Source: Macrostomum lignano
Taxonomy: Eukaryota
DNA length: 64,000 nt
NCBI GenBank assembly: GCA_002269645.1
Contig: NIVC01000363.1
Coordinates: forward strand, 248,001-312,000
Reading direction: 5' to 3'
Positions within the stretch are counted from its first letter, which is position 1. The number at the start of each line of letters is the position of its first letter. Below the pieces are notes generated by a model. The model did no database searches and was not told the origin of the DNA. It was given only the letters and a program-made list of their open reading frames with translations. Position numbers and translations under genes: made by a program. Shown one piece after another: positions 2,636 to 45,253 of this stretch.

Positions 2636-3830
2636 CGCTCTCTTGCCTGTCTGGCGACCCTCTTGTCTGTCTGGTGATTCTCTCTTGTCTGTCTGGCGAC
2701 CCTCTTGTCTGTCTGGTGATTCTCTCTTGTCTGTCTGGTGATTCTCTCTTGTCTGTCTGGCGACCCTCTTGTCTGTCTGGTGATTCTCTCTTGTCTGTCT
2801 GGTGATTCTCTCTTGTCTGTCTGGCGACCCTCTTGTCTGTCTGGTGATTCTCTCTTGTCTGTCTGGCGACCCTCTTGTCTGTCTGGTGATTCTCTCTTGT
2901 CTGTCTGGTGATTCTCTCTTGTCTGTCTGGTGATTCTCTTGTCTGTCTGGTGATTCTCTCTTGTCTGTCTGGTGATTCTCTTTTGTCTGTCTGGCGACCC
3001 TCTTGTCTGTCTGGTGATTCTCTCTTGTCTGTCTGGTGATTCTCTTGTCTGTCTGGTGACACTCTTGTCTGTCTGGTGACACTCTTGTCTGTCTGGTGAT
3101 TCTCTCTTGTCTGTCTGGTGACCCTCTTGTCTGTCTGGCGACCCTCTTGTCTGTCTGGTGATTCTCTCTTGTCTGTCTGGTGATTCTCTTGTCTGTCTGG
3201 TGATTCTCTCTTGTCTGTCTGGTGATTCTCTTTTGTCTGTCTGGCGACCCTCTTGTCTGTCTGGTGATTCTCTCTTGTCTGTCTGGTGATTCTCTTGTCT
3301 GTCTGGTGACACTCTTGTCTGTCTGGTGACACTCTTGTCTGTCTGGTGATTCTCTCTTGTCTGTCTGGTGACCCTCTTGTCTGTCTGGCGACCCTCTTGT
3401 CTGTCTGGTGATTCTCTCTTGTCTGTCTGGTGATTCTCTTGTCTGTCTGGTGATTCTCTCTTGTCTGTCTGGTGATTCTCTTTTGTCTGTCTGGCGACCC
3501 TCTTGTCTGTCTGGTGATTCTCTCTTGTCTGTCTGGTGATTCTCTTGTCTGTCTGGTGACACTCTTGTCTGTCTGGTGATTCTCTCTTGTCTGTCTGGTG
3601 ACTCTCTTGTCTGTCTGGCGATTCTCTCTTGTCTGTCTGGTGATTCTCTCTTGTCTGTCTGGCGACCCTCTTGTCTGTCTGGTGATTCTCTCTTGTCTGT
3701 CTGGTGATTCTCTCTTGTCTGCCTGGTGATTCTCTCTTGTCTGTCTGGTGACACTCTTGTCTCTGGTGACGCTCTTGTCTGTCTCGTGACGCTCTGGTCT
3801 GTCTGGTGACCATCTTGTCTGGTGACGCTC
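2636..3830 (+). repeat. 20-22-bp minisatellite (CTCTCTTGTCTGTCTGGTGATT variants) just downstream of the MATE stop codon
   Basis: Direct tandem periodicity; source of the spurious QTRE/DRQE ORFs on the minus strand. Confidence 0.95.
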
Positions 3831-6627: not shown

Positions 6628-9600
6628 TCACAGGGCCATCTTGCGCCCCTCGACACTCAGAGGGACAGCTTTTTTAATCGACTTGCCGCTGCGACGCTTG
6701 TCTTTCAATTGACGCACGTGCCGTTCGAACCAGACTTGGCGTTCGCGTTTTTTCGGCGCAGCGGAGGCCAGTTTAACTGCGTCCATGTCAACCCGGGGCT
6801 TGGGCCGAACCACGTAGTCTTTGTTTGACGGCATGGGCACTCGGGCGCGGCCGACGTAGCCCGGCTCGCCCGGCTTGGCCTTGCCGCGCTGGTCCGAACC
6901 GTCGCCCCGGCCTGGCCGCGCAAGAAAATTTAGATTTTTCAATTCCTACTTACAGTAGCTTGAAAGAAAAGATCTAAAAAGCTTTAAAAAGATTATTATT
7001 ATGTCACATACTGACTATCCTACTTAAAGTAGGATTGCCAATCTAGCATCTAGCTCTAGCCTCTAATCTAAACCTAACCCGAACCTTAAATCCGAAGCCT
7101 TTTGTCATCTGTTCTACTTACAGTAGCTTTAATTCACATTATAGAATAATATTGCAATCTTCTAGCTACTATACTAATAGTAGCTATTACTATTAATAAT
7201 AGCTACTATTAATAAAACTAGCTACTATACTAATAGTAGCTAATTTTGAATTATACCCCGTAAAATCTCACCGGAAGATCTGGCATCGCTGGCCCGTTTG
7301 TGCTGCGGAATATTAGCATAATCCCGCTCCTCTCGCTCCTCCTTAGTCAGAGTGCTGTAGTTGTCAGTTAGCTGAAAGATAGGCCTAGACCAGGTGTTAA
7401 TTAGCCTGCCGCAGATGATCTTATTAGGCCGAGACTCGCGCTTGTGCTTGTACAGGTACATCACAGCCTTGCCGAGGCCGCTGCTAGCCAGTCCGTCCGA
7501 GTCTATGCCGGGAATGGTCTCCAGCATTCTCAGTAGGGTCTCGCGAATCTGCAACGACGGCAGTGAGCCATCGGGACAGGGGGCCAGCCACTCGGTGATG
7601 GCGCTGAGCATTGCGCTGTCGCTCAGGCTGGACACGACATCGGCTTTAGTGAGCAGGCTCACCACCTTGGGTAATAGCTTCATCTTTTTGGTTGCTGGGC
7701 GACCGCTTTTCATCAGTTCCCGATCGCTCTGCGCCGCTTCAAGCATCTCGTAGACAACCTGAGATAGAGATAGTTTTGATGAGTAAATTCGAATGAGCCA
7801 TACCGCAATCATAACCTCCCGGTGTCAAACTCTAATCCTTGGTGTCAAATTATAATTCTTGATGCCAAGTTATAACCCAGGATACCAAATTCTAATCTAG
7901 GATACCAAATTCTAAGTCAGGATACCAAATTCTAATCTAGATTACCAAATTCTAATCTAGGTTACCAAATTCTAAGCCAGGATACCGAATTCTAATCTAG
8001 TATACCAAATTCTATGCCAGTATACCAAATTCTAATCTAGAATACCAAATTCTAATCTAGGATACCAAATTCTAATCTAGGATACCAAATTCTAATCTAG
8101 GATACCAAATTCTAATCTAGGATACCAAATTCTATGCCAGGATACCAAATTCTAATCTAGGATACCAAATTCTATGCCAGGATACCAAATTCTAATCGAG
8201 GATACCAAATTCTAATCTAGGTTACAAAATTCTATGCCAGGATACCAAATTCTATGCCAGGATACCAAATTCTAATCTAGGATACCAAATTCTATGCCAG
8301 GATACCAAATTCTAATCTAGGATACCAAATTCTAAGTTAGGATACCAAATTCTAATCTAGGATACCAAATTCTAATCTAGGATACCTAAATTCTAATCTA
8401 GGATACCAAATTCTAAGCCAGGATACCAAATTCTAATCTAGGATACGAAATTCTTATCTAGGATACCAAATTCTAAGCCAGGATACCAAATTCTAATCTA
8501 GGATACTAAATTCTTATCTAGGATACTAAATTCTAATCTAGGATACCAAATTCTAATCTAGGATACCAAATTCTAAGTCAAGATACCAAATTCTAATCTA
8601 GGATACCAAATTCCCATCTAGGATACCAAATTCTAATCTAGGATACCAAATTCTAATCTAGGATACCAAATTCTAATCTAGGATACCAAATTCTTATCTA
8701 GGATACCAAATTCTAAGCCAGGATACCAAATTCTAATCTAGGATACTAAATTCTTATCTAGGATACTAAATTCTAAGCCAGGATACCAAATTCTAATCTA
8801 GGATACTAAATTCTTATCTAGGATACTAAATTCTAATCTAGGATACCAAATTCTAATCTAGGATACCAAATTCTAAGTCAAGATACCAAATTCTAATCTA
8901 GGATACCAAATTCTAATCTAGGATACCAAATTCTAATCTAGGATACCAAATTCTAATCTAGGATACCAAATTCTAATCTAGGATACCAAATTCTAATCTA
9001 GGATACCAAATTCTAAGTCAAGATACCAAATTCTAATCTAGGATACCAAATTCTAATCTAGGATACCAAATTCTAAGTCAAGATACCAAATTCTAATCTA
9101 GGATACCAAATTCTAATCTAGGATACCAAATTCTAATCTAAGATACCAAATTCTAATCTAGAATACCAAATTCTAAGTCAGGATACCAAATTCTAATCTA
9201 ATCTAGGATACCAAATTCTAATCTAGAATACCAAATTCTAAGTCAGGATACCAAATTCTAATCTAATCTAGGATACCAAATTCTAATCTAGGATACCAAA
9301 TTCTAATCTAGGATACCAAATTCTAAGTCAGGATACCAAATTCTAATCTAGATTACCAAATTCTAATCTAGGTTACCAAATTCTAAGCCAGGATACCAAA
9401 TTCTAATCTAGGATACCAAATTCTATCCAGGATACCAAATTCTAATCTAGATACCAAATTCTAATCTAGGATACCAAATTCTAATCTAGGATACCAAATT
9501 CTAATCTAGGATACCAAATTCTAATCCAGGATACCAAATTCTAATCAGGATACCAAATTCTAATCTAGGATACCAAATTCTATGCCAGGATACCAAATTC

Positions 9601-12600
9601 TATGCCAGGATACCAAATTCTAATCTAGGATACCAAATTCTATGCCAGGATACCAAATTCTAATCTAGGATACCAAATTCTAATCTAGGATACCAAATTC
9701 TAATCTAGGATACCAAATTCTAATCTAGGATACCAAATTCTAATCTAGGATACCAAATTCTAAGCCAGGATACCAAATTCTAATCTAGGATACGAAATTC
9801 TATCTAGGATACCAAATTCTAAGCCAGGATACCAAATTCTAATCTAGGATACAAATTCTTATCTAGGATACCAAATTCTAATCTAGGATACCAAATTCTA
9901 ATCTAGGATACCAAATTCTAAGTCAAGATACCAAATTCTAATCTAGGATACCAAATTCTAATCTAGGATACCAAATTCTAATCTAGGATACCAAATTCTA
10001 ATCTAGGATACCAAATTCTAATCTAGGATACCAAATTCTAATCTAGGATACCAAATTCTAAGCCAGGATACCAAATTCTAATCTAGGATACCAAATTCTT
10101 ATCTAGGATACTAAATTCTAAGCCAGGATACCAAATTCTAATCTAGGATACTAAATTCTTATCTAGGATACTAAATTCTAATCTAGGATACCAAATTCTA
10201 ATCTAGGATACCAAATTCTAAGTCAAGATACCAAATTCTAATCTAGGATACCAAATTCTAATCTAGGATACCAAATTCTAATCTAGGATACCAAATTCTA
10301 ATCTAGGATACCAAATTCTAATCTAGGATACCAAATTCTAATCTAGGATACCAAATTCTAAGTCAGGATACCAAATTCTAATCTAGGATACCAAATTCTA
10401 ATCTAGGATACCAAATTCTAAGTCAAGATACCAAATTCTAATCTAGGATACCAAATTCTAATCTAGGATACCAAATTCTAAGTCAAGATACCAAATTCTA
10501 ATCTAGAATACCAAATTCTAAGTCAGGATACCAAATTCTAATCTAATCTAGGATACCAAATTCTAATCTAGGATACCGAATTCTAATCTAGGATACCAAT
10601 TTCTAATCTAATCTAGGATACCAAATTCTAATCTAGGATACCAAATTCTAATCTAGGATACCAAATTCTAAGTCAGGATACCAAATTCTAATCTAGGATA
10701 CCAAATTCTAATCTAGGTTACCAAATTCTAATCTAGGATACCAAATTCTAATCTAGGATACCAAATTCTAATCTAGGATACCAAATTCTAAGCCAGGATA
10801 CCAAATTCTAAGTCAGGATACCAAATTCTAATCTAGGATACCAAATTCTAATCTAGGATACCAAATTCTAATCTAGGATACCAAATTCTAATCTAGGATA
10901 CCAAATTCTAATCTAGGATACCAAATTCTAATCTAGGATACCAAATTCTAAGTCAGGATACCAAATTCTAATCTAGGATACCAAATTCTAATCTAGGATA
11001 CCAAATTCTAATCTAGGATACCAAATTCTAATCTAGGATACCAAATTCTAATCTAGGATACCAAATTCTAATCTAGGATACCAAATTCTAAGCCAGGATA
11101 CCAAATTCTAATCTAGGATACCAAATTCTAAGCCAGAATACCAAATTCTAATCTAGGATACCAAATTCTAATCTAGTATACCAAATTCTAAGTCAGGATA
11201 CCAAATTCTAATCAGGATACCAAATTCTAATCTAGGTACCAAATTCTAATCTAGGATACCAAATTCTAATCTAGGATACCAAATTCTAATCTAATCTAGG
11301 ATACCAAATTCTAATCTAGGTTACCAAATTCTAATCTAGGATACCAAATTCTAATCTAGGATACCAAATTCTAATCTAATCTAGGATACCAAATTCTAAT
11401 CTAGGATACCAAATTCTAAGCCAGGATACCAAATTCTAATTTAGGATACCAAATTCTAATCTAGGATATCAAATTCTAATCTAGGATACCAAATTCTAAT
11501 CTAGGATACCAAATTCTAATCTAATCTAGGATACCAAATTCTAATCTAGGATACCAAATTCTAATCTAGGATACCAAATTCTAAGTCAGGATACCAAATT
11601 CTAATCTAGGATACCAAATTCTAATCTAGGTTACCAAATTCTAATCTAGGTTACCAAATTCTATGCCAGGATACCAAATTCTAATCTAGGATACCAAATT
11701 CTAATCTAGGATACCAAATTCTAAGCCAGGATACCAAATTCTAATCTAGGATACCAAATTCTAATCTAGTATACCAAATTCTAAGTCAGGATACCAAATT
11801 CTAAGTCAGGATACCAAATTCTAATCTAGGATACCAAATTCTAATCTAGTATACCAAATTCTAAGTCAGGATACCAAATTCTAAGTCAGGATACCAAATT
11901 CTAATCTAGGTTACCAAATTCTAATCTAGGATACCAAATTCTAATCTAGGATACCAAATTCTAATCTAATCTAGGATACCAAATTCTAATCTAGGATACC
12001 AAATTCTAATCTAGTATACCAAATTCTAAGTCAGGATACCAAATTCTAAGTCAGGATACCAAATTCTAATCTAGGTTACCAAATTCTAATCTAGGATACC
12101 AAATTCTAATCTAGGATACCAAATTCTAATCTAATCTAGGATACCAAATTCTAATCTAGGATACCAAATTCTAATCTAGTATACCAAATTCTAAGTCAGG
12201 ATACCAAATTCTAAGTCAGGATACCAAATTCTAATCTAGGTTACCAAATTCTAATCTAGGATACCAAATTCTAATCTAGGATACCAAATTCTAATCTAAT
12301 CTAGGATACCAAATTCTAATCTAGGATACCAAATTCTAATCTAGTATACCAAATTCTAAGTCAGGATACCAAATTCTAAGTCAGGATACCAAATTCTAAT
12401 CTAGGTTACCAAATTCTAATCTAGGATACCAAATTCTAATCTAGGATACCAAATTCTAATCTAATCTAGGATACCAAATTCTAATCTAGGATACCAAATT
12501 CTAATCTAGTATACCAAATTCTAAGTCAGGATACCAAATTCTAAGTCAGGATACCAAATTCTAATCTAGGTTACCAAATTCTAATCTAGGATACCAAATT

Positions 12601-15600
12601 CTAATCTAGGATACCAAATTCTAATCTAATCTAGGATACCAAATTCTAATCTAGGATACCAAATTCTAATCTAGTATACCAAATTCTAAGTCAGGATACC
12701 AAATTCTAAGTCAGGATACCAAATTCTAATCTAGGTTACCAAATTCTAATCTAGGATACCAAATTCTAATCTAGGATACCAAATTCTAATCTAATCTAGG
12801 ATACCAAATTCTAATCTAGGATACCAAATTCTAATCTAGTATACCAAATTCTAAGTCAGGATACCAAATTCTAAGTCAGGATACCAAATTCTAATCTAGG
12901 TTACCAAATTCTAATCTAGGATACCAAATTCTAATCTAGGATACCAAATTCTAATCTAATCTAGGATACCAAATTCTAATCTAGGATACCAAATTCTAAT
13001 CTAGGATACCAAATTCTAATCAGGATACCAAATTCTAAGTCAGGATACCAAATTCTAAGTCAGGATACCAAATTCTAATCTAGGTTACCAAATTCTAATC
13101 TAGGATACCAAATTCTAATCTAGGATACCAAATTCTAATCTAATCTAGGATACCAAATTCTAATCTAGGATACCAAATTCTAATCTAATCTAGGATACCA
13201 AATTCTAATCTAGGATACCAAATTCTAAGCCAGGATACCAAATTCTAATCTAGGATACCAAATTCTAATCTAGTATACCAAATTCTAATCTAGGATACCA
13301 AATTCTAAGTCAGGATACCAAATTCTAATCTAGGATACCAAATTCTAATCTAGGATACCAAATTCTAATCTAGGATACCAAATTCTAATCTAATCTAGGA
13401 TACCAAATTCTAATCTAGGTTACCAAATTCTAATCTAGGATACCAAATTCTAATCTAGGATACCAAATTCTAATCTAGGATACCAAATTCTAATCTAGGA
13501 TACCAAATTCTAATCTAGGATACCAAATTCTAATTAGGATACCAAATTCTAATCTAGGATACCAAATTCTAATCTAGGATACCAAATTCTAATCTAGGAT
13601 ACCAAATTCTAATCTAATCTAGGATACCAAATTCTAATCTAGGATACCAAATTCTAATCTAGGATACCAAATTCTAATCTAGGATACCAAATTCTAATCT
13701 AGGATACCAAATTCTAATCTAGGATACCAAATTCTAATCTAGGATACCAAATTCTAATCTAGGATACCAAATTCTAATCTAGGATACCAAATTCTAATCC
13801 AGGATACCAAATTCTAAGCAGGATACCAAATTCTAATCTAGGATACCAAATTCTAATCTAGGATACCAAATTCTAATCTAGGATACCAAATTCTAATCAG
13901 GATACCAAATTCTAATCTAGGATACCAAATTCTAATCTAGGATACCAAATTCTAAGTCAGGATACCAAATTCTAAGTCAGGATACCAAATTCTAATCTAG
14001 GTTACCAAATTCTAATCTAGGATACCAAATTCTAATCTAGGATACCAAATTCTAATCTAATCTAGGATACCAAATTCTAATCTAGGATACCAAATTCTAA
14101 TCTAGTATACCAAATTCTAAGTCAGGATACCAAATTCTAAGTCAGGATACCAAATTCTAATCTAGGTTACCAAATTCTAATCTAGGATACCAAATTCTAA
14201 TCTAGGATACCAAATTCTAATCTAATCTAGGATACCAAATTCTAATCTAGGATACCAAATTCTAATCTAGTATACCAAATTCTAAGTCAGGATACCAAAT
14301 TCTAAGTCAGGATACCAAATTCTAATCTAGGTTACCAAATTCTAATCTAGGATACCAAATTCTAATCTAGGATACCAAATTCTAATCTAATCTAGGATAC
14401 CAAATTCTAATCTAGGATACCAAATTCTAATCTAGTATACCAAATTCTAAGTCAGGATACCAAATTCTAAGTCAGGATACCAAATTCTAATCTAGGTTAC
14501 CAAATTCTAATCTAGGATACCAAATTCTAATCTAGGATACCAAATTCTAATCTAATCTAGGATACCAAATTCTAATCTAGGATACCAAATTCTAATCTAG
14601 TATACCAAATTCTAAGTCAGGATACCAAATTCTAAGTCAGGATACCAAATTCTAATCTAGGTTACCAAATTCTAATCTAGGATACCAAATTCTAATCTAG
14701 GATACCAAATTCTAATCTAATCTAGGATACCAAATTCTAATCTAGGATACCAAATTCTAATCTAGTATACCAAATTCTAAGTCAGGATACCAAATTCTAA
14801 GTCAGGATACCAAATTCTAATCTAGGTTACCAAATTCTAATCTAGGATACCAAATTCTAATCTAGGATACCAAATTCTAATCTAATCTAGGATACCAAAT
14901 TCTAATCTAGGATACCAAATTCTAATCTAGTATACCAAATTCTAAGTCAGGATACCAAATTCTAAGTCAGGATACCAAATTCTAATCTAGGTACCAAATT
15001 CTAATCTAGGATACCAAATTCTAATCTAGGATACCAAATTCTAATCTAATCTAGGATACCAAATTCTAATCTAGGATACCAAATTCTAATCTAGTATACC
15101 AAATTCTAAGTCAGGATACCAAATTCTAAGTCAGGATACCAAATTCTAAGTCAGGATACCAAATTCTAATCTAGGATACCAAATTCTAATCTAGGATACC
15201 AAATTCTAATCTAGGATACCAAATTCTAATCTAGGATACCAAATTCTAATCTAGGATACCAAATTCTAATCTAGGATACCAAATTCTAATCTAGGATACC
15301 AAATTCTAAGTCAGGATACCAAATTCTAAGTCAGGATACCAAATTCTAATCAGGATACCAAATTCTAATCTAGGATACCAAATTCTAATCTAGGATACCA
15401 AATTCTAATCTAGGATACCAAATTCTAATCTAGGATACCAAATTCTAATCTAGGATACCAAATTCTAATCTAGGATACCAAATTCTAATCTAGGATACCA
15501 AATTCTAATCTAGGATACCAAATTCTAATCTAGGATACCAAATTCTAAGCCAGGATACCAAATTCTAATTTAGGATACCAAATTCTAATCTAGGATATCA

Positions 15601-18600
15601 AATTCTAATCTAGGATACCAAATTCTAATCTAGGATACCAAATTCTAATCTAGGATACCAAATTCTAATCTAGGATACCAAATTCTAATCTAGGATACCA
15701 AATTCTAATCTAGGATACCAAATTCTAATCTAGGATACCAAATTCTAATCTAGGTTACCAAATTCTAATCTAGGATACCAAATTCTAATCTAGGATACCA
15801 AATTCTAATCTAGGATACCAAATTCTAAGCCAGGATACCAAATTCTAATCTAGGATACCAAATTCTAATCTAGGATACCAAATTCTAATCTAGGATACCA
15901 AATTCTAAGTCAGGATACCAAATTCTAATCTAGGATACCAAATTCTAATCTAGGATACCAAATTCTAATCTAGTATACCAAATTCTAAGTCAGGATACCA
16001 AATTCTAAGTCAGGATACCAAATTCTAATCTAGGATACCAAATTCTAATCTAGGATACCAAATTCTAATCTAGGATACCAAATTCTAATCTAGGATACCA
16101 AATTCTAATCTAGGATACCAAATTCTAATCTAGTATACCAAATTCTAAGTCAGGATACCAAATTCTAATCAGGATACCAAATTCTAATCTAGGATACCAA
16201 ATTCTAATCTAGGATACCAAATTCTAATCTAGGATACCAAATTCTAATCTAATCTAGGATACCAAATTCTAATCTAGGATACCAAATTCTAATCTAGTAT
16301 ACCAAATTCTAAGTCAGGATACCAAATTCTAAGTCAGGATACCAAATTCTAATCTAGGATACCAAATTCTAATCTAGGATACCAAATTCTAATCTAGGAT
16401 ACCAAATTCTAATCTAGGATACCAAATTCTAATCTAGGATACCAAATTCTAATCTAGGATACCAAATTCTAAGTCAGGATACCAAATTCTAATCTAGGAT
16501 ACCAAATTCTAATCTAGGATACCAAATTCTAATCTAGGATACCAAATTCTAATCTAATCTAGGATACCAAATTCTAATCTAGGATACCAAATTCTAATCT
16601 AGTATACCAAATTCTAAGTCAGGATACCAAATTCTAAGTCAGGATACCAAATTCTAATCTAGGTTACCAAATTCTAATCTAGGATACCAAATTCTAATCT
16701 AGGATACCAAATTCTAATCTAATCTAGGATACCAAATTCTAATCTAGGATACCAAATTCTAATCTAGTATACCAAATTCTAAGTCAGGATACCAAATTCT
16801 AAGTCAGGATACCAAATTCTAAGTCAGGATACCAAATTCTAATCTAGGATACCAAATTCTAATCTAGGATACCAAATTCTAAGCCAGGATACCAAATTCT
16901 AATCTAGGATACCAAATTCTAAGCCAGAATACCAAATTCTAATCTAGGATACCAAATTCTAATCTAGGATACCAAATTCTAATCAGGATACCAAATTCTA
17001 AGTCAGGATACCAAATTCTAATCTAGGATACCAAATTCTAATCTAGGATACCAAATTCTAATCTAGGATACCAAATTCTAATCTAGGATACCAAATTCTA
17101 ATCTAGGATACCAAATTCTAATCTAGGATACCAAATTCTAATCTAGGATACCAAATTCTAATCTAGGATACCAAATTCTAATCTAGGATACCAAATTCTA
17201 ATCTAGGATACCAAATTCTAATTAGGATACCAAATTCTAATCTAGGATACCAAATTCTAATCTAGGATACCAAATTCTAATCTAGGATACCAAATTCTAA
17301 TCTAGGATACCAAATTCTAATCTAGGATACCAAATTCTAATCTAGGATACCAAATTCTAATCTAGGATACCAAATTCTAATCTAGGATACCAAATTCTAA
17401 TCTAGGATACCAAATTCTAATCTAGGTTACCAAATTCTAATCTAGGATACCAAATTCTAATCTAGGATACCAAATTCTAATCTAGGATACCAAATTCTAA
17501 TCCAGGATACCAAATTCTAATCTAGGATACCAAATTCTAATCTAGGATACCAAATTCTAATCTAGGATACCAAATTCTAAGTCAGGATACCAAATTCTAA
17601 TCTAGGATACCAAATTCTAATCTAGGATACCAAATTCTAATCAGGATACCAAATTCTAAGTCAGGATACCAAATTCTAATCTAGGATACCAAATTCTAAT
17701 CTAGGATACCAAATTCTAATCTAGGATACCAAATTCTAATCTAGGATACCAAATTCTAATCTAGGATACCAAATTCTAATCTAGGATACCAAATTCTAAT
17801 CTAGGATACCAAATTCTAAGTCAGGATACCAAATTCTAATCTAGGATACCAAATTCTAATCTAGGATACCAAATTCTAATCTAGGATACCAAATTCTAAT
17901 CTAGGATACCAAATTCTAATCTAGGATACCAAATTCTAATCTAGGATACCAAATTCTAATCTAGGATACCAAATTCTAAGTCAGGATACCAAATTCTAAT
18001 CTAGGATACCAAATTCTAATCTAGGATACCAAATTCTAATCTAGGATACCAAATTCTAATCTAGGATACCAAATTCTAATCTAGGATACCAAATTCTAAT
18101 CTAGGATACCAAATTCTAATCTAGTATACCAAATTCTAAGTCAGGATACCAAATTCTAAGTCAGGATACCAAATTCTAATCTAGGTTACCAAATTCTAAT
18201 CTAGGATACCAAATTCTAATCTAGGATACCAAATTCTAATCTAATCTAGGATACCAAATTCTAATCTAGGATACCAAATTCTAATCTAGTATACCAAATT
18301 CTAAGTCAGGATACCAAATTCTAAGTCAGGATACCAAATTCTAATCTAGGTTACCAAATTCTAATCTAGGATACCAAATTCTAATCTAGGATACCAAATT
18401 CTAATCTAATCTAGGATACCAAATTCTAATCTAGGATACCAAATTCTAATCTAGTATACCAAATTCTAAGTCAGGATACCAAATTCTAAGTCAGGATACC
18501 AAATTCTAATCTAGGTTACCAAATTCTAATCTAGGATACCAAATTCTAATCTAGGATACCAAATTCTAATCTAATCTAGGATACCAAATTCTAATCTAGG

Positions 18601-21600
18601 ATACCAAATTCTAATCTAGTATACCAAATTCTAAGTCAGGATACCAAATTCTAAGTCAGGATACCAAATTCTAATCTAGGTTACCAAATTCTAATCTAGG
18701 ATACCAAATTCTAATCTAGGATACCAAATTCTAATCTAATCTAGGATACCAAATTCTAATCTAGGATACCAAATTCTAATCTAGTATACCAAATTCTAAT
18801 CAGGATACCAAATTCTAAGTCAGGATACCAAATTCTAAGTCAGGATACCAAATTCTAATCTAGGTACCAAATTCTAATCTAGGATACCAAATTCTAATCT
18901 AGGATACCAAATTCTAATCTAGGATACCAAATTCTAGGATACCAAATTCTAATCTAGGATACCAAATTCTAATCTAATCTAGGATACCAAATTCTAATCT
19001 AGGATACCAAATTCTAATCTAGTATACCAAATTCTAAGTCAGGATACCAAATTCTAAGTCAGGATACCAAATTCTAATCTAGGTTACCAAATTCTAATCT
19101 AGGATACCAAATTCTAATCTAGGATACCAAATTCTAATCTAATCTAGGATACCAAATTCTAATCTAGGATACCAAATTCTAATCTAGTATACCAAATTCT
19201 AAGTCAGGATACCAAATTCTAAGTCAGGATACCAAATTCTAATCTAGGTTACCAAATTCTAATCTAGGATACCAAATTCTAATCTAGGATACCAAATTCT
19301 AATCTAATCTAGGATACCAAATTCTAATCTAGGATACCAAATTCTAATCTAGTATACCAAATTCTAAGTCAGGATACCAAATTCTAAGTCAGGATACCAA
19401 ATTCTAAGTCAGGATACCAAATTCTAATCTAGGTTACCAAATTCTAATCTAGGATACCAAATTCTAATCTAGGATACCAAATTCTAATCTAATCTAGGAT
19501 ACCAAATTCTAATCTAGGATACCAAATTCTAATCTAGTATACCAAATTCTAAGTCAGGATACCAAATTCTAAGTCAGGATACCAAATTCTAATCTAGGTT
19601 ACCAAATTCTAATCTAGGATACCAAATTCTAATCTAGGATACCAAATTCTAATCTAGGATACCAAATTCTAATCTAGGATACCAAATTCTAATCTAATCT
19701 AGGATACCAAATTCTAATCTAGGATACCAAATTCTAATCTAGGATACCAAATTCTAATCTAATCTAGGATACCAAATTCTAATCTAGGATACCAAATTCT
19801 AATCTAGTATACCAAATTCTAAGTCAGGATACCAAATTCTAATCTAGGTTACCAAATTCTAATCTAGGATACCAAATTCTAATCTAGGATACCAAATTCT
19901 AATCTAGGATACCAAATTCTAATCTAGGATACCAAATTCTAATCTAGGATACCAAATTCTAATCTAGGATACCAAATTCTAATCTAGGATACCAAATTCT
20001 AATCTAGGATACCAAATTCTAATCTAGGATACCAAATTCTAATCTAGGATACCAAATTCTAATCTAGGATATCAAATTTTAATCTAGGATATCAAATTCT
20101 AATCCAGGATATCGAATGCTAATCCAGGATATCAAATGCTAAGCCAGGATACCAAATTCTAATCTAGAATACCTGGGTTATAACGCTATCAGCGTCAGTC
20201 AAGAATTCGCTGCGCGCCGAACTGCGCTTAGACGAACGGCGGCGTTCCTCCTTCTTGCGTTGCATAATCGCGTCGAAATCTGACACGGGAAATCCGGGTG
20301 GCTGATCCTCGTCGCCGCTCGATGACGATGACCCGTCATCGTCGCCGTCTCTCTTTTTCTTCGGCTTCGTAACGCCGGTTTCGCCCACGACGTCGCCTTC
20401 AGCCCCGGCCTCCTCGGCATTGAATCCTTCGAACTCTTCGTCCATGTCAGCTTCACCGGCGACATCGTCTTTGTCATCCTCCTGGTCGGAGTCGCCAAAG
20501 ATATCGGTGATGATGCCACCGCTGGCTCCGGCCTCCTGATGCTGCTGCTGTTGAACCGAGTCAGCGTTCTCATCGTCCGGATCGTCCATAACGGTCGGCC
20601 GATGCTTGCGCGGCTGTTTAGCCTCGGGCGGCTCGAAGCCTTCAAAATCAGATTCGGCGTCGTCTTCGCCATCGTCGGCGTGCTCTGCAGCGGCAGCTGC
20701 AACAGTCCGATCGCGATTCGGCTTGTCCTCTTCTGAAGACGATGATAATCGCCGACGTTTGCGCGACTCAGCGCCCGACGTCTGGGCAGCTTCATCGTCT
20801 AAGTTGGGTTCGACAGTTTCACCATCTGTAACAACCACATTGGGTTCCACTGCATCGCCATCTGTAACAACCACATTGGGTTCCACTGCATCGCCATCTG
20901 TAACAACCACATTGGGTTCCACTGCATCGCCATCTGTAACAACCACATTGGGTTCCACTGCATCGCCATCTGTAACAACCACATTGGGTTCCACTGCATC
21001 GCCATCTGTAACAACCACATTGGGTTCCACTGCATCGCCATCTGTAACAACCACATTGGGTTCCACGTCAATTTCAACGACTGATTCAACGACAACAGAA
21101 TCTGCAACTACAGGCTGCTGTTCAAGACCGTTATCTTCGGAATTTTCTGATATTTGCATGCTGTCATTATCGGCCGAGTCATTGGCAATGACTGCTTCTT
21201 CAGCGATAGGCGAAGCTGGCCGTTCTACATCGGGTGAAGCTGGCTCTTCTACATCGGGTGAAGCTGGCTCTTCTACATCAGGTGAAGCTGGTGGTTCTAC
21301 ATCAGGTGAAGCTGGCCGTTCTACATCAGGTGAAGCTGGCAGTTCTACAGCAGGTGAAGTTGGCCGTTCTACATCAGGTGAAGCTGGCTGTTCTACATCA
21401 GGTGAAGCTGGCTCTTCTACATCAGGTGAAGCTGGATGATCTACATCGGGAGAAGCTGGCTCTTCTACATCAGGTGAAGCTGGCTGTTCTACATCAGGTG
21501 AAGCTGGCTCTTCTACATCAGGTGAAGCTGGATGCTCATCTTCATCAGGTGAAGCTGGGTGATTATGAGACATTGGCGACTGTGATGCAGTGTAGCTATC

Positions 21601-21759
21601 CTGACTACTGTCCAAGTTGAGCTGCTCCTGTTGAGCACTATTTGACTGTCTATCTTCTGAAGCATCTAATTGAGGAGACATTGGCCGATTGGCAAGTTGT
21701 TGTTGCTCAATAATTTCAGATTGAGAGTTTGAGTCTGAATGATAGTGATTATCTGCCAT
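6628..21759 (-). CDS. IWS1: IWS1/Spn1 transcription elongation factor, about 785 aa; coding exons 21759-20173, 7758-7272, 6911-6628
   Basis: Exon 2 encodes the TFIIS-N-like core (AAQSDRELMKSGRPATKKMKLLPKV...WLAPCPDGSLPSLQIRETLL...SSGLGKAVMYLYKH...LINTWSRPIF). Exon 3 encodes the conserved C-terminus [24 protein letters not shown]...SVEGRKMAL. Exon 1 is acidic with DIFGDSD and E/D-FEGF motifs. Junctions CAG|GTATTC..CAG|GTT (phase 0) and TCCG|GTGAG..CAG|GC (phase 1) are in frame. The start is taken as MADNHY, just after an AG acceptor at 21777. Confidence 0.93.
7830..20170. repeat. About 12.3-kb satellite of 20-bp monomers (GGATACCAAATTCTAATCTA, roughly 600 copies) with 165-bp higher-order repeats, filling IWS1 intron 7759-20172
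   Basis: Continuous 20-bp period; the variant GGTT monomer recurs at 11909, 12074, 12239 and at 14000, 14165, 14330, 14495, 14660, 14825 (165-bp spacing); degenerate copies at both edges. Confidence 0.97.
20815..21065 (-). repeat. Coding 36-bp tandem repeat in IWS1 exon 1 (VEPNVVVTDGDA x7)
   Basis: Seen in the DNA and in the ORF 20164..21798 translation. Confidence 0.95.
21205..21560 (-). repeat. Coding 24-bp tandem repeat in IWS1 exon 1 (PASPDVEE-type octapeptide x15)
   Basis: Seen in the DNA and in translation. Confidence 0.95.
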
Positions 21760-22976
21760 GTTGGTAGGCGAAACTTTCTGAAATTTGATTAAAAACAATT
21801 TTTATAAGCTGGATTTTTTAATAACAATTCATGGCTTAAATTAATGTACATGAGGCCATTATTTAAGTTATTATATATCTCCAAAGCATACCACACATGT
21901 AAAACTGCTGGCCTACCTGGCTGGCATTGGCATAAATTGTGTCAGACCAAGGGTAAGTAAAAATGCAGTAAAATATAACCACTAGATCTGCTCCACATCC
22001 AATTCAGTTATATATTTTAAATGGTACATCCTATTTATATGCCTGGCTAAACCTATTTTTTAAAACAAACCTATTTTTAAAACACAACATATTATATAAA
22101 ATGACAATGAATATAGGCCAATTTCAATCAGTTGCTAGTCAGATTGTCATATTCTATTTCAATATATGGGATAATATAGTGACTAGGAGCAAAAATTAGC
22201 CTGGTAAAATAATGAGAAAGTGACCAAAATATTATTAGATATTATAAGATATATTAGATATATATTATTAGATATATATAACTAATAATTAAGTTAGCAA
22301 GATACTTAAGGATATAGTACTTAGGGCAATCCAATAATTTTGAACATTAAATAATTTTGTTGAAAATAATAACATAAGTTAAGTTATTTTAAGCTTATTA
22401 AGTAATAGAATAGATAATAAAAATCAAATGTAATATTTTTGTTTAAACAATATTTTTAATTGGTATAAATTTAACCAATCAATTATAGCATGGCTAGACA
22501 ACTTATTGCCCTAACAACAATCATACTTATAGCTAAGCTGTATCCTATTATAGAACTCTACAAACTTGATATCAACTTGCAATCTATATGAAAACAATGA
22601 TAGATTAGACAGCCTATATGAAATGGCTTGCTAGATACTACCTGTTTGCTAACCATAAGTGCAGCCACTATCTAGCTGCTTTTGCTTACTAGTAACAATG
22701 TTAAGAAGGGCTCTATCAGTATCAGAGGTCCAATGTGTAGGGGTTTTGTTGAATAGATTAATGCTACTCAATCAGTTTTTTATAGGCCTATCTTTTGTTT
22801 TAGAAAAGTCCAAAAGAAATTGCTCACTGGTGTATAGAGTAGACACTTTTCAATGTTGCTGAGTATATATAAAATTTAAAACAATAAAAAATCAATTTAG
22901 AAATGGGTCAAGTATTAGGAAAACTTTTTTATGCTTTTAATATTTGAATTTTTAATTTGAATACCCCTATGGAGGC

Positions 22977-26741: not shown

Positions 26742-28954
26742 ATGACGACATCATCGACCATCATTCAAGTGAGCCAGCCCAACGAAAACGATGTCACAAT
26801 CCGAATTGACCTGACATTTCGCAATGGCCAGGCTCCCGTCACAATGCACCAGCAGATTCTGCAGCCACAGCAGCAGCATTCAGTCCAGCAGTCGCAGCCG
26901 CAGCATTCAGTTTGGCAGCAGCAGCAGCCTCCAAGCCAGCAGTCCCAGCAGTTGTCGGCAGCTGCTCAGATCGAACAGCTGATGCGCAACATGAAAAGCT
27001 TGGATGTCAGCCGTGACGTGGCATCACCAGCCGCACCACCTGGCCGTCGGGCCGCCCAGCTTCTTGCCAGCATCAACTCGCAGCCGATACCGAAGCTGAA
27101 CTTTGAGAACCGGCGCAGGAAGGCCGCCGAAGCTGCCGCCGCTGCCGACGCTGCTGCCGGAATCGACAGATCTCAGACACAGGTAACTTCCCTGACCTCA
27201 GTGCATCCTGCTCAAAGTGTGCACTTGCGAATGCGATCCAGTGTAACTTCCTTGAGCTCAGTGCATCCTGCTCAAAGTGTGCACTTGTGAATGCGATCCA
27301 GTGTGACTTCCTTGAGCTCAGTGCATCCTGCTCAGAGTGTGCATTTGTGAATGAGATCCAGTGTGACTTCCTTGAGCTCAGTGCATCCTGCTCAAAATGT
27401 GCATTTGTGAATGCGATCCGGTGTGACTTGACTTCCCTGTGGTCAGTGCATGCTGCTCAAAGTGTCCATTTGTGAATGCGATCCAGTGTGACTTCCTTGA
27501 GCTCAGTGCATCCTGCTCAAAGTGTGCACTTGTGAATGCGATTCAGTGTGACTTCCTTGAGCTCAGTGCATCCTGCTCAGAGTGTGCATTTGTGAATGCG
27601 ATCCAGTGTGACTTCCTTGAGCTCAGTGCATCCTGCTCAAAGTGTGCATTTGTGAATGAGATCCAGTGTGACTTCCTTGAGCTCAGTGCATCCTGCTCAA
27701 AATGTGCATTTGTGAATGCGATCCGGTGTGACTTGACTTCCCTGTGGTCAGTGCATGCTGCTCAAAGTGTCCATTTGTGAATGCGATCCAGTGTGACTTC
27801 CTTGAGCTCAGTGCATCCTGCTCAAAATGTGCATTTGTGAATGCGATCCGGTGTGAATTGACTTCCCTGTGGTCAGTGCATGCTGCTCAAAGTGTCCATT
27901 TGTGAATGCAGCCCAGTATCCAGTCTCAACAACGCCCCATCTCCTTCTCCAGGTCATCGGCATCCCCGATGTCCTCGACAGCGATGACTGGCAGGCCTCG
28001 GGTTCCGACGATGACGCGGGCGGCTTGGACAGCAGCCGCAGGAGCAGCCAGCAGCTGTACCTGCCGAAGGCTCCGCCGCATTCCATTGACCCACAGACCA
28101 CGACGAACTTTTCCAAACTCGCCAGGGGCTGCGCCGAAGGCAGCGACGATGACGACGACATCCTGCGCGAGCTCGAGGACGGAGACGGCTACAACCGCGG
28201 CGAGGTGCCGGACCGGCGACGCCGCCAGCTGAGCTCCACAACAACCACAACCTTGGCACCTTCGCCCTACTCATCGAACGCCTCCCCGCCAGGATTTCAG
28301 GTCCACACGCCGCCCAGCCACGAAGAGCATCAGCAGGTGCAGTGGCCGCCGCAGGCAGCTCACGTAGTCAGGTAATTCAGCACCATTGATTGCACAAAAC
28401 CGTGAGCACAGAGCACACTGCATCAAGCTTGTCACTTCATTCCCACACCCGAATTCAGGCAGCAGCACAGCATGACCGTCAATGCTGAGCCACCGGTGCA
28501 GCAGCAGCAGCCTCCGGTGCCTCCTCAGCCCGCCGCGCCTGAGAAGCGCAAGCGCGGTCGACCGAGAAAGTTCGACACCGGTGCTGCCGCCAATGGCAGC
28601 TCAGCAACTGTTGCTGGGGCCAGCGCCCAGCAGCCTCAGCAGCTGCATCTCCTTCAGCCAAGGCGTCAGGCTGCGATTTTTCTGGGAGCTCAGCGAGGCA
28701 GCTCTGCGGCTGCGGACTTCGTCTGCAGTGAGGCTCTCCGGCTTTGCTTGTTTGAGATGAAATTGCTGAGTATTGGGACTATGAGCTGCTTTTATACTTA
28801 ATTCCTCACTGACTTTACCTGCACAGGAGAAGAGCTGCAGGAAGCCCGGCGTGTGATCGGGAACCTGGCGTACGGAGAGCTGACTCAGAAGAATGAGCAC
28901 GGAGAGCTGTGAGTATCCTGTCTGTCAGTCTGTGTGTCTGTCTGTCAGTCTGTG

Positions 28955-29025
<71 letters not shown>

Positions 29026-29062
29026 GTGTGTTAGTGTCTATCTGCCTGTCTTAGTGTCTTAG

Positions 29063-29101
<39 letters not shown>

Positions 29102-29159
29102 GTGTGTTAGTTTCTATCTGCCTGTCTTAGTGTCTTAGTGTCTGTCTGTCTGTCTGTCA

Positions 29160-29225
<66 letters not shown>

Positions 29226-32940: not shown

Positions 32941-34252
32941 AATGTGCCTGTGCAGTGTGTAGATATGAATTACATTAAATGTAAACAATCATACCTGGAT
33001 GTTGTCAAGGTTGACGCCCGCCTTGATTTTTGTACGCTCGCACATGCATACGCGTGCATTGTAGACCGATTACAAATGTAGTTGTACTGCACAATTGGAT
33101 CATGTACAAATTAAGAGGCTATTGTGAACCTAATTAGTCAATAGAAAAACTGCAGTTCTATAGATTTTTGTTTTTTTTGTACCGTTAGTGCTCAGAAAAA
33201 ATGTCTTTACGCTGCAAATTTGTTTTATTATGTTATAGAGTTAGAGTTATTTCAAAGTCGCCTACATGCAACATTTTAATACGATATAGTTAAGTTAGCC
33301 AAACTTACTGTTACTACTACTACTACTACTATTTTAATTACCATGACGCCACAGCGGCCACATGTACGTATAGGGGTGTATGGGTGCAGGTTTATGTCGT
33401 AGTATTCTAGGCTTTGAATTAAAGTTAGCCATAATTTTTTCCTATATGCCTGAAATACAAGGGTGCCACCTGTACAAACAGCGTCTGAGTTTCCTTAAAC
33501 TAGGTCTATATCTAATAATTGCAATCTAGGCCCTACACAAATCTGCAGATATCACATTATTACTAGGCCTATCTTAGGCTATCTGCCTATATCAGCTCAG
33601 TTCAAAATTAGAGCTGTGATATTAGCTTTTTAGTCTGTCCACAATTTGAGGCCTAATGGGTGCTCTTACTAAGAGCTCTTAGAGTTTTCCTACCCCCTGC
33701 ATATAGGATAGGGGGCCTAAGGGCATAGCATCAGCATGATGGCATCAGCATGTCAGTGATGTCACAGGTTTTAGGGAAAACTTTTGGCATAGGACATAAT
33801 GATATTATTATCAACAGTAAGCCTACCTACTTGACATTGACAGTGGTGGCCTGTGGCCAGCCTAGTATGAAAATTTCTTGCAAATCCTTAAAAATTATAT
33901 GATAGAATAGTTATTCAGGCCTAGATTTGAGAGTCAGGGCAATGCAAGTGCTTAATTTTTTGGTGTGCATTTGTAGGCCTAGGCTATCTATTGTCTATCT
34001 ATTCAATTTTTGTTTAGGTGTAGGCCTATATCCAGCATGCTCTGGACTAGGCCTATGACCTCAATCAGTTTTCTTGTATCTTTTATTTCAGAATAGTCCA
34101 AGAGAAATTGCTCATTGGTGCATAAAGTAGTGACTTTTCAATTTTGCAAAGTATACTTTGTCCAAATTTCGTATTTAACTTAACTTTTTTAATAAAATTG
34201 GCTAAGCTTATTGACATAGTCTATTTTTATTAAAAATATACATTTTAAACTT

Positions 34253-43200: not shown

Positions 43201-45253
43201 TTGGCGTTCTAATTAAGATGACTAGGTGGATTACTGAGCAAATCAGTTTCTGAATTTCTCTCACAGCCGGTCCAATGTGAGCACTTCGACCTTCGTTTCG
43301 GCTATGCAATTAGCCGTTCTCCGTTCCTCCCTGGTCGGGAATATGGTTTAATTTGTTTATTTATCAGCATACTCGTAAATAACAAGCTGCATGCAAGTTA
43401 AAGTCCACCCCACTTAATTGGCTCACTCAAGCAAAGCTTTCTCGCCAAAGTAATCGCCAGATTTGAGTACTCGAATCAACTGAGGATGCGCGCCGCCGTG
43501 CACCTTTTGCGTCACTTTTACCTGAAATTTCATATTTTTTAGGACTTTAAAGCAATTGCAGCTCTAGGGTTTCTGTATTGATATCTAAGAGTACTTGTCA
43601 CCGCTTCTGCCCTCCTCTGTGTCCCTCAGAGTGTCACTAGCTACCTATACCCTCCCCAGTGTCCCTAAATGAGTCACCACCTACCCTCCCCAGTGTCCCT
43701 AAATGAGTCACCACCTACCCTCCCTAGTGTCTCTAAATGAGTCACCACCTACCCTCCCCAGTGTCCCTAAATGAGTCACCACCTACCCTCCCCAGTGTCC
43801 CTAAATGAGTCACCACCTACCCTCCCCAGTGTCCCTAAATGAGTCACCACCTACCCTCCCCAGTGTCCCTAAGTGAGTCACCACCTACCCTCCTCAGTGT
43901 CCCTAAGTGAGTCACCACCTACCCTCCCCAGTGTCCCTAAGTGAGTCACCACCTACCCTCCCTAGTGTCTCTAAATGAGTCACCACCTACCCTCCCCAGT
44001 GTCCCTAAATGAGTCACCACCTACCCTCCCCAGTGTCCCTAAATGAGTCACCACCTACCCTCCCCAGTGTCCCTAAGTGAGTCACCACCTACCCTCCCAG
44101 TGTCCCTAAGTGAGTCACCACCTACCCTCCTCAGTGTCCCTAAGTGAGTCACCACCTACCCTCCCCAGTGTCCCTAAGTGAGTCACCACCTACCCTCCCC
44201 AGTGTCCCTAAGTGAGTCACCACAGACTCAAAATCGCAACTCACCACGCCATCCTTAATGATGAAGAACGTGTTGCCAGTCTCGCCCTCGCGTACAATGT
44301 ACTGCTCGGCCTCGAACGAATCCTTTCGTAAAGTATAATTATAACAGTATGGAATTTAATTTACCAAAAAATAATGTTAAGGAAATTTTTATCGGGATTA
44401 TGACCGTCTTACCTCTTCGATAGCGTCCGCTATTTTATTCAACTTGGAAGTGTCTAGATTTTTTAGCAGCGGCACGCTGAAATTCAAATTATTATAGTGA
44501 TTTTAGTGAGATAACTAGCCATTTAGCACCCCCGTTGGGGGGCGCAAAAAGACACAAATTAATTGGTTTCCATTTTTGCCCAAGAGTAATAATTTAACTA
44601 ATCACGCCCCCCGTTGGGGAGCAAAGAATGAATGTAATAAGTTAATTAATAATGTAATTTAATAACATAGAATAAAATGTAGGAGTACCCCTGAGCTGCT
44701 ATGCTCCCCCCAAATGATATGGTTTATGATTACTGGAGCTATGGTGTTGTATTCAGGTGTTGTACCTGCGTAAAAATCCAACATAATCGCTTTGCTTCTC
44801 CAGTCCAGCCTTCATCATGATGGCCTTGAACACCGTGCGGTCCAGGCACCACAGCTTTGCCGAACTTTCGGCTAAAAATTATGGAAAATAGGTTTAATGC
44901 AATATCTGTCTGCCTTCGGAGCATGCTAGAATTCAGCAAATTATTTGTGCTGTAAACGTATGTGTATCTTCTGAACTAAGAATTGCAAATCAAGTTTTTA
45001 AAGTGCAAAGTTACACTAATTACATCTCAATGATGTCACAGATACATACGGCAGTGTGAAGCTGTTTTGTAGAAGCCAATATTCATACATTGCTTGTGTT
45101 CAGCTAGGTCAGCTAGGTGTCTTTGTTGACATGCATTGTAAAATGAAGGGAGAGGAGAGAGAAGTGAAGGAAGAGGGGAGAAGTTGAGGGAGAGGGCAGA
45201 GAAGGGAAGGGAGGAGAGAGAAGAGATGGGAAGGGAGGAGAGAGGAGAGATGG

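What the first reader, a model, noticed from the sequence alone, without database searches (positions are those of the whole stretch)
7759..20172. 12.4-kb intron of IWS1 that is about 99% one satellite with a 165-bp higher-order repeat
A conserved Pol II elongation-factor gene must be transcribed through roughly 600 copies of a 20-bp monomer. Inside, an 8-monomer unit (GGTT variant, canonical, 25-bp variant, canonical x2, GTATA/AAGTCA variant, AAGTCA variant, canonical; 7x20+25 = 165 bp) repeats in blocks near 11.9-12.9, 14.0-15.0 and 18.2-19.6 kb, separated by homogeneous monomer tracts, with degenerate edges. This resembles centromeric higher-order repeat organisation, and 165 bp is close to a nucleosome-plus-linker length. 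Both strands have stops in all frames. Whether it acts as satellite chromatin, an elongation or timing element, or a length-polymorphic regulator of IWS1 is inference.
Basis: partly seen in the sequence, partly recalled or inferred. Interest (0 to 1): 0.7.

Follow-up and report, generated by a model that had tools for sequence, protein, structure and literature searches.

The report
Intron bloated by a private minisatellite
The first coding intron of an animal IWS1 gene is a real 12.4-kb array of about 600 copies of a 20-bp unit with local 165-bp higher-order blocks, but it looks like an extreme case of the intronic minisatellite expansion seen all over this window, not a centromere-like element.

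Summary
TRF finds one array at 7861-20173: period 20, 607 copies, 91% matches. It fills 99% of a GT-AG, phase-0 intron (7759-20172, minus strand). Removing that intron gives a protein that aligns without a gap to human IWS1 (E 5.6e-75). The 8-monomer, 165-bp unit is real. There are 16 perfect copies against 0.002 expected by shuffling. Five blocks total 4.0 kb, 32% of the intron.

The 165-bp length looks incidental: it equals eight 20-bp monomers plus a 5-bp ATCTA duplication, and 140-bp and 160-bp periods also occur in the array. The monomer is found nowhere else in the 64 kb. Tandem repeats make up 27% of the rest of the window, each with its own unit, and a neighbouring gene has an intron that is 83% one 19-bp array.

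One new detail: the intron's first 20 nt are themselves a monomer. The transcript therefore carries about 600 weak copies of the donor site (TTG|GTATCC), with the authentic CAG|GTATTC first and best.

Most likely this is a locally born, probably neutral minisatellite that is spliced out with the intron. It is a new member of a known kind, and interest is low to moderate.

The parts
20173..21759 (-). IWS1 coding exon 1: ATG at 21759, last codon CAG ends at 20173. It encodes an acidic, disordered N-terminus and the start of the conserved region (VSDFDAIMQRKK...DADSVITQ).
   Evidence: ORF and frame. Its last ~70 residues align to human IWS1 from residue 526.
7759..20172 (-). IWS1 intron 1, 12,414 bp, phase 0. 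Donor CAG|GTATTC, acceptor TCTATCTCAG|GTT.
   Evidence: Sequence at both borders. The alignment to human IWS1 has no gap at the junction.
7821..20172 (.). 20-bp minisatellite array of about 605 head-to-tail monomers, all in one orientation. The + strand unit is GGATACCAAATTCTAATCTA; in the transcript it reads TAGATTAGAATTTGGTATCC.
20153..20172 (-). First 20 nt of the intron, GTATTCTAGATTAGAATTTG. This is a monomer with one mismatch, so the authentic donor site lies in register with the repeat.
   Evidence: sequence.
20053..20132 (-). Four monomers, the 3rd to 6th from the donor, in which the repeat's GT is ATATCC. The donor-like dinucleotide is lost next to the authentic donor.
   Evidence: (monomer list).
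11798..13022 (.). 165-bp higher-order repeat block 1.
13895..15000 (.). 165-bp higher-order repeat block 2, the most homogeneous: lag-165 identity 0.927 against 0.858 at lag 20.
16439..16882 (.).
18070..18804 (.). 165-bp higher-order repeat block 3a.
18928..19433 (.). 165-bp higher-order repeat block 3b.
7759..7860 (-). 3' tail of the intron: decayed monomers grading into unique sequence. It holds the pyrimidine tract and acceptor (...TTTACTCATCAAAACTATCTCTATCTCAG).
7272..7758 (-). IWS1 coding exon 2, holding the TFIIS-N/Med26 domain. Donor TCCG|GTGAGA.
6912..7271 (-). IWS1 intron 2, 360 bp, with its own 19-bp array at 7163-7242.
6628..6911 (-). IWS1 last coding exon (...ARVPMPSNKDYVVRPK...SVEGRKMAL, stop).

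Best explanation
This is a locally born, private minisatellite that grew inside a once-short first coding intron of IWS1. It was most likely seeded by tandem duplication of the intron's own first ~20 nt. It then grew by replication slippage and unequal sister-chromatid or homologue exchange. Exchange out of register by eight monomers amplified a marked block into the 165-bp higher-order units, and the older edges decayed. The array is transcribed as part of the IWS1 pre-mRNA and removed with the intron.

It is tolerated for three reasons. The authentic donor is the first and best of about 600 donor-like sites. The branch, pyrimidine tract and acceptor region lies outside the array. The unit has no AATAAA and no open frame. 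Its most probable functional status is neutral or slightly deleterious passenger DNA, in a genome where introns and intergenic DNA are generally prone to this kind of expansion.

Shown here: the anatomy, the exon-intron structure, the higher-order structure, the privacy of the monomer, and the repeat richness of the neighbourhood. Inferred: the seeding from the donor-proximal sequence, the exchange mechanism, and neutrality.
For: - Array and its limits.
- Both flanks are consecutive exons of one gene, same strand and phase. The alignment to human IWS1 has no gap at the junction, E 5.6e-75. Pfam Med26 domain.
- The monomer is absent from the other 51 kb on both strands. No dispersed relatives appear in a self-BLAST.
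- 27% of the rest of the window is tandem repeat with unrelated units.
- The OGFOD3-like gene has a ~780-bp intron that is 83% one 19-bp array. IWS1 intron 2 and exon 1 carry their own arrays.
- The higher-order repeat is non-random (16 units against 0.002) but covers only 32% of the intron, in five blocks. Periods of 7 and 8 monomers also occur, as expected from out-of-register exchange.
- The edges and the left third are more diverged than the interior and right.
- In the transcript, the first 20 nt of the intron are a monomer. There are 605 GT dinucleotides, of which 496 read TTG|GTATCC (4 of 9 matches to CAG|GTAAGT). The authentic CAG|GTATTC is the best at 6 of 9.
- There are 0 AATAAA and 1 ATTAAA in the sense strand, and stops in all frames.
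- The sense RNA shows no unusual structure, z -1.0. There is no Rfam match.
- Large intronic VNTRs and higher-order repeats within VNTRs are documented elsewhere (PMC13131567, PMC11118589, PMC2588610).
Against: - Nothing here measures selection. There are no population data or related-species data, and the organism could not be identified (best homologues 59-65% identical).
- The array reaches the exon border exactly. The four monomers closest but one to the donor have lost their GT. That could reflect selection against nearby decoy donors, meaning the array is not entirely without effect on splicing.
- At 12.4 kb it is about ten times longer than any other array in the window.
- Genome-wide copy number of the monomer is unknown, so a satellite family with other, larger arrays is not excluded.
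Confidence: 0.8

Rival explanations
1. The array has a cis-regulatory role in IWS1 expression. Its ~600 weak donor-like sites (and ~1,100 YAG) could bind U1 snRNP or hnRNPs and modulate splicing efficiency, transcript retention or elongation. Alternatively, its length could act as a polymorphic delay or dosage tuner.
For: - Every monomer is a paralogue of the intronic half of the authentic donor.
- The four monomers at +40 to +100 have lost the GT.
- The unit lacks poly(A) signals.
- Precedent: the intronic CACNA1C VNTR is reported to affect gene regulation (10.1101/2025.09.15.676436, abstract).
Against: - The decoys match U1 poorly, 4-5 of 9 positions, and lack the exonic CAG.
- The RNA shows no structure signal.
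- The same kind of array fills other introns and intergenic DNA in the window, so no gene-specific explanation is needed.
- There is no conservation evidence. The loss of GT near the donor rests on four adjacent, probably co-descended monomers at a degenerate edge.
Confidence: 0.08
2. The array is correct in kind, but its length or internal order is an assembly artefact (collapse, expansion or mis-ordering of reads within a long low-complexity array).
For: A 12.4-kb array of 20-bp units with 57% identical monomers is hard to assemble. Blocks of identical 165-bp units are where assemblers mis-estimate copy number. No read data are available.
Against: - The array has at least 44 distinct monomer variants in a structured, non-periodic long-range order.
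- Both edges are decayed and grade into unique sequence.
- The two flanks are consecutive exons of one gene in the right order, strand and phase, which argues against a misjoin.
- The indel rate is low: 19 monomers are one base short or long (18 of 19 bp, 1 of 21 bp) out of 603, and several of these recur as the same variant.
Confidence: 0.07
3. The array is a functional satellite-chromatin domain. It would be a member of a genome-wide, possibly centromeric or heterochromatic, satellite family whose 165-bp higher-order unit phases nucleosomes.
For: Higher-order organisation is real, and neighbouring units are more alike than neighbouring monomers. 165 bp is near a nucleosome repeat length. The array is almost free of CpG, 9 against 265 expected.
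Against: - It is 12.4 kb, inside a housekeeping gene, and bounded directly by that gene's coding exons.
- The monomer is 20 bp and has no other copy in 64 kb.
- There is no match in metagenome contigs or in papers.
- The higher-order repeat covers only 32% of the intron, and 140- and 160-bp periods coexist with it.
- 165 bp is explained by 160 plus a 5-bp duplication.
- Higher-order repeats occur in ordinary VNTRs (PMC2588610).
Confidence: 0.03

Closest known systems
Large intronic VNTRs, e.g. the 30-bp repeat TRACT in intron 3 of human CACNA1C (3-30+ kb)
   Same: A unit of tens of bp, a kilobase-to-tens-of-kilobases array lying entirely within an intron of an expressed gene, and many unit variants arranged in structured patterns (PMC13131567, PMC11118589, 10.1101/311795; listed).
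   Different: The array here fills 99% of its intron and abuts the donor site in register. Nothing is known about its polymorphism or effect. The host gene and organism are different.
Human arrays >10 kb of VNTR or simple satellite with higher-order repeats (Warburton et al. 2008)
   Same: Short-unit arrays show domains of highly similar multi-unit higher-order repeats covering part of the array, and some arrays lie within introns (PMC2588610).
   Different: The human examples have kilobase-scale higher-order units. Here the unit is 8 monomers (165 bp) in five blocks.
Satellite-filled gigantic introns of Drosophila Y-linked fertility genes (kl-2, kl-3, kl-5)
   Same: Introns are made almost entirely of simple tandem repeats that Pol II must transcribe through (PMC6508621, PMC11207136).
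   Different: Those introns are hundreds of kb to Mb, heterochromatic and Y-linked, and need a dedicated spermatocyte programme. This one is 12.4 kb in a housekeeping-type gene amid ordinary genes.
Centromeric alpha-satellite higher-order repeats
   Same: A multi-monomer unit whose copies are more alike than neighbouring monomers, and a homogenised interior with diverged edges.
   Different: The monomer is 20 bp against 171 bp, the array is 12 kb against Mb, the location is genic, and there is no evidence of kinetochore chromatin. The resemblance is in the mode of amplification, not in function.
Intronic repeat-expansion loci such as ATXN10 (ATTCT)n. This comparison rests on my own knowledge and was not checked here.
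   Same: Repeat tracts of tens of kb within an intron are transcribed and spliced out.
   Different: Those are pathogenic expansions of 5-bp units. Here the unit is a 20-bp minisatellite in what is presumably a normal reference allele.

Membership tests
Minisatellite / VNTR | Head-to-tail array of a unit of roughly 10-100 bp | tested here: met
   Period 20, 607 copies, all on one strand.
Minisatellite / VNTR | Copy number varies between individuals | not testable with these tools
   Only one haplotype is available.
Satellite DNA with higher-order repeats | Multi-monomer units more similar to each other than adjacent monomers are | tested here: met
   Lag-165 identity 0.927 against lag-20 identity 0.858 at 13861-15061. 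16 perfect units against 0.002 by shuffling. This holds for only 32% of the intron.
Centromeric or heterochromatic satellite | Very long arrays (hundreds of kb or more) in gene-poor regions, with the family present at many sites | tested here: not met
   12.4 kb between two coding exons of one gene. There are no other copies in the 64-kb window. The rest of the genome was not available.
Centromeric or heterochromatic satellite | CENP-A or H3K9me3 chromatin, and nucleosome phasing | not testable with these tools
   Needs ChIP or MNase data.
IWS1 / Spn1 (host gene) | TFIIS N-terminal-like helical bundle and the conserved C-terminal region | tested here: met
   Pfam PF08711, 1.2e-08, above the curated cutoff. 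Alignment to human IWS1 residues 526-819, E 5.6e-75, and to yeast and Encephalitozoon Iws1/Spn1 structures.
Spliceosomal GT-AG intron | GT...AG borders, a pyrimidine tract, and a reading frame and homology restored by removing the intron | tested here: met
   CAG|GTATTC ... TCTATCTCAG|G, phase 0. The alignment to human IWS1 has no gap at the junction.
Spliceosomal GT-AG intron | The junction is observed in RNA | not testable with these tools
   No transcript data.
Satellite-containing gigantic introns (Drosophila Y type) | Intron size of hundreds of kb to Mb | tested here: not met
   12,414 bp.

The most novel reading that the evidence does not exclude
The array is built from copies of the intron's own donor-site half. 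The IWS1 pre-mRNA therefore carries about 600 in-register weak U1-type sites downstream of the true donor. This could act as a U1 or hnRNP landing pad that tunes splicing, retention or elongation of the transcript of a factor that itself couples elongation to RNA processing. That would be a length-polymorphic autoregulatory element.
Probability: 0.04. Interest if true: 0.6.

Novelty: new member of a known kind. Interest (0 to 1): 0.22.

Why it matters
As it stands, the finding mainly shows how far a private minisatellite can inflate an intron of an essential-type gene without disturbing its exon structure. It also shows that higher-order repeat structure arises in ordinary genic arrays and need not signal centromere function. 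The one feature worth a splicing specialist's attention is that the repeat is in register with the donor site. That makes it a natural test of how the spliceosome picks the first of about 600 near-copies of a donor. If the array proved length-polymorphic and correlated with IWS1 output, it would join the small set of functional intronic VNTRs.

Tried and rejected
I did not try to get round it.
- Homologue searches with IWS1 exon 2 and with the OGFOD3-like exon gave no close relative. Best identities were 59% and 65%, and named hits were spread over molluscs, arthropods, amphioxus and vertebrates. The organism stays 'unidentified metazoan'. Amphioxus, which I suspected because of its minisatellite-rich introns, is excluded: identity to Branchiostoma is 64%.
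- A scan of metagenome contigs for two canonical monomers gave 0 hits. A full-text paper search for the monomer gave 0 hits.
- I asked whether the intron position is ancient. In Lottia the nearest intron is 10 codons downstream. The closest metagenomic homologue has no intron there. There is therefore no support for a conserved position, and no comparison of intron size was possible.
- Rfam over the whole window found nothing. Folding two higher-order units of sense RNA gave z -1.0. I rejected a structured-RNA or nested-ncRNA reading.
- Self-BLAST of the window looked for a transposon origin or dispersed relatives of the monomer and found none. It showed only cross-matches between low-complexity arrays and one ~100-bp dispersed element.
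- The nucleosome-length argument for 165 bp was rejected as numerology, because 140- and 160-bp periods coexist and 165 = 160 + 5.
Full report
**What is there.** Tandem Repeats Finder reports a single array at 7861-20173 with period 20, 607 copies and 91% matches. Two more decayed copies lie at 7821-7861. The canonical + strand unit is GGATACCAAATTCTAATCTA.
- With up to 3 mismatches it matches 564 times, against 0.01 expected from dinucleotide-preserving shuffles.
- With up to 4 mismatches there are 602 hits, all on the + strand and all inside the array. None lie elsewhere in the 64 kb on either strand.
- Splitting the array at a conserved anchor gives 603 monomers: 543 of 20 bp, 38 of 25 bp and 18 of 19 bp. 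There are 44 distinct sequences, and 344 monomers are exactly canonical.
- GC content is flat at 0.30-0.31 across the array, against 0.45-0.52 in the flanking 1-kb bins that hold the neighbouring exons.

**The host gene and the intron.** The gene is on the minus strand.
- Exon 1 (21759-20173) ends ...GTT ATA ACC CAG. The next bases in the transcript are GTATTC.
- Exon 2 starts at 7758, after ...CTATCTCTATCTCAG. Both borders are in phase 0.
- Joining exon 1, exon 2 (7758-7272) and exon 3 (6911-6628) gives a 785-residue protein. It has a Pfam Med26/TFIIS-N domain above the curated cutoff.
- Its last 294 residues align to human IWS1 residues 526-819 at E 5.6e-75. The alignment runs from exon 1 sequence (VSDFDAIMQRKK...) into exon 2 (VVYEMLEAAQSDRELM...) without a gap at the junction.
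- The identification as IWS1, the intron borders and the inference that the conserved protein needs transcription through the array therefore all stand.
- RNA evidence is not available here.
- The intron position is not shared with the two homologues I could inspect. Lottia has an intron 10 codons downstream, and the closest metagenomic homologue reads straight through.

**The higher-order repeat.** I coded each monomer by variant.
- It appears 16 times as a perfect 8-monomer string. Shuffling monomer order 2000 times gives a mean of 0.002 and a maximum of 1.
- Requiring at least 97% identity between adjacent 165-bp stretches defines five blocks: 11798-13022, 13895-15000, 16439-16882, 18070-18804 and 18928-19433. 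They total 4.0 kb, 32% of the intron.
- In the cleanest block, identity is 0.927 at lag 165 and 0.858 at lag 20.
- The rest of the array is homogeneous monomer tracts or other patterns. The AAGTCA variant also recurs every 7 monomers (28 spacings) and every 8 monomers (7 spacings). One run of it with an 8-monomer period (160 bp) leads directly into a 165-bp block at about 17.6-18.2 kb.
- The 25-bp variant is the canonical unit with ATCTA duplicated. So 165 bp is 160 bp plus that 5-bp duplication, and I see no reason to treat its closeness to a nucleosome repeat as more than coincidence.

Read in the transcript's sense, the first 20 nt of the intron are GTATTCTAGATTAGAATTTG. That is a monomer with one mismatch, so the array reaches the exon border in register with the donor site.
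- The intron has 605 GT dinucleotides, and 496 of them sit in TTG|GTATCC.
- Scored by matches to CAG|GTAAGT, the authentic CAG|GTATTC is the best site at 6 of 9. The in-array copies score 4-5.
- The third to sixth monomers from the donor read ATATCC and have lost the GT.
- The acceptor end is different. About 60-100 nt of decayed or unique sequence carry the pyrimidine tract and the AG.
- The sense strand has no AATAAA and one ATTAAA.
- All six frames are closed, with a longest open run of 52 codons.
- Two higher-order units of sense RNA fold no better than shuffles, z -1.0. Rfam finds nothing in the window.

From this I infer that the array was seeded by duplication of the donor-proximal 20 nt of a formerly short intron. 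I also infer that it is tolerated because it offers neither a competitive donor, nor a poly(A) signal, nor an open frame.

**Context.** The window is full of tandem arrays. Merged TRF intervals cover 41% of it, and 27% when this array is set aside. Units are mostly 14-36 bp and arrays 0.3-1.3 kb. A self-BLAST shows the units are unrelated to one another apart from low-complexity cross-matches.
- IWS1 intron 2 has its own 19-bp array. IWS1 exon 1 has two in-frame coding arrays of 24 and 36 bp.
- The OGFOD3-like gene at 57.6-59.4 kb has a ~780-bp intron of which 651 bp are one 19-bp array, with only about 50-80 nt left at each splice site.
- The IWS1 array is thus the extreme of a local, and presumably genome-wide, habit: about ten times longer than the next largest.
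- It is the only one of the two intronic arrays whose splice sites I mapped that runs up to a splice site.

**Source organism.** I could not name it. The best homologues of two genes are 59-65% identical and spread over several phyla. It is a metazoan, because the C-terminal ARVPMPSNKDYVVRPK-type tail is shared with animal IWS1. The monomer was not found in metagenome contigs or in the paper library.

**Explanation and rivals.**
- *Best explanation (0.8).* A private minisatellite grew by slippage and unequal exchange. Its higher-order blocks are a by-product of out-of-register exchange. It is removed with the intron and has no demonstrated function.
- *Cis-regulatory role (0.08).* The array could act as donor decoys, a U1 or hnRNP platform, or a length-dependent delay. 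The register with the donor and the GT-less monomers beside it are the only hints. Those monomers lie at a decayed edge and probably descend from one event.
- *Wrong assembled length or order (0.07).* This cannot be excluded without reads. The ordered, in-phase exons on both sides argue against a misjoin.
- *Centromere-like or heterochromatic satellite (0.03).* Array size, genic setting, monomer length, local privacy and partial higher-order coverage all argue against it.

**Comparison with what is known.**
- Kilobase-to-tens-of-kilobases intronic VNTRs with structured unit variants are documented. An example is the 30-bp CACNA1C repeat of 3-30+ kb (PMC13131567, PMC11118589, 10.1101/311795).
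- Higher-order repeats within large short-unit arrays, some of them intronic, were described in the human genome (PMC2588610).
- Introns made almost wholly of satellite are known from Drosophila Y-linked genes, at a far larger scale and with a dedicated expression programme (PMC6508621, PMC11207136).

This locus works like the first two and is a new example of that kind. It fails the size and setting criteria for the centromeric and the gigantic-intron classes.

**Verdict.** It is a new member of a known kind, with interest about 0.2. The donor-register feature is the only point that might repay an experiment.

Noticed in passing
window 20804-21066 and 21208-21558: IWS1 exon 1 contains two in-frame coding minisatellites: 36 bp x 7.3 (VEPNVVVTDGDA) and 24 bp x 14.5 (PASPDVEE-type). 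Both lie in the disordered N-terminus. Both periods are multiples of 3, unlike most non-coding arrays in the window.
   Followed up: partly
window 1-64000: Tandem repeats cover 41% of the window, and 27% without the IWS1 array. There are about 30 separate arrays, mostly with 14-36-bp units and 0.3-1.3 kb long, each with its own unrelated unit.
   Followed up: partly
window 57602-59420, minus strand: An OGFOD3-like 2OG-Fe(II) oxygenase gene. Its ~780-bp intron (about 58073-58851) is 83% one 19-bp array (58122-58772), leaving about 50-80 nt at each splice site. This is a second intron in the window dominated by a private minisatellite.
   Followed up: yes
window 41617-42123 and 48525-49097, minus strand: A protein-kinase-domain exon (Pfam Pkinase 1.4e-32) and an upstream coiled-coil exon that looks like the N-terminus of a cGMP-dependent kinase (by eye only). 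The DNA between them holds at least five private arrays (43648-44223, 45144-45458, 45815-46747, 47405-47945, 48178-48484).
   Followed up: partly
window 7163-7242: IWS1 intron 2 (6912-7271) has its own 19-bp array (TAGCTACTATACTAATAG x 4.3), starting about 30 nt from its donor.
   Followed up: no
window 22767-22874, 34058-34155, 41207-41311: A ~100-bp dispersed element, 80-85% identical between copies, possibly a MITE or SINE fragment. It is the only non-tandem repeat family seen in the window.
   Followed up: no
window 54563-55649 and 28918-29223: A 1.1-kb (CAGA)n tract and a 0.3-kb (CTGT)n tract: the same microsatellite in opposite orientations, 25 kb apart.
   Followed up: no
window 7759-20172: The intron is almost free of CpG, 9 observed against 265 expected from base composition, whereas IWS1 exon 1 has CpG at expectation (105 against 108). 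This simply follows from the CpG-free unit, but it gives a 12-kb CpG desert inside a gene body.
   Followed up: partly
L001 (Lottia gigantea KB199651.1) 3145-3682; L002 (ENA metagenome contig): The IWS1 intron position is not shared. Lottia has a ~540-bp intron 10 codons downstream of the position seen here. The closest homologue (59% identity, metagenomic) has an uninterrupted reading frame across it.
   Followed up: partly
window 35780-36445, minus strand: ORFs that by eye resemble the C-terminal part of a hAT-type transposase. Pfam gave no hit, so this is unconfirmed.
   Followed up: partly
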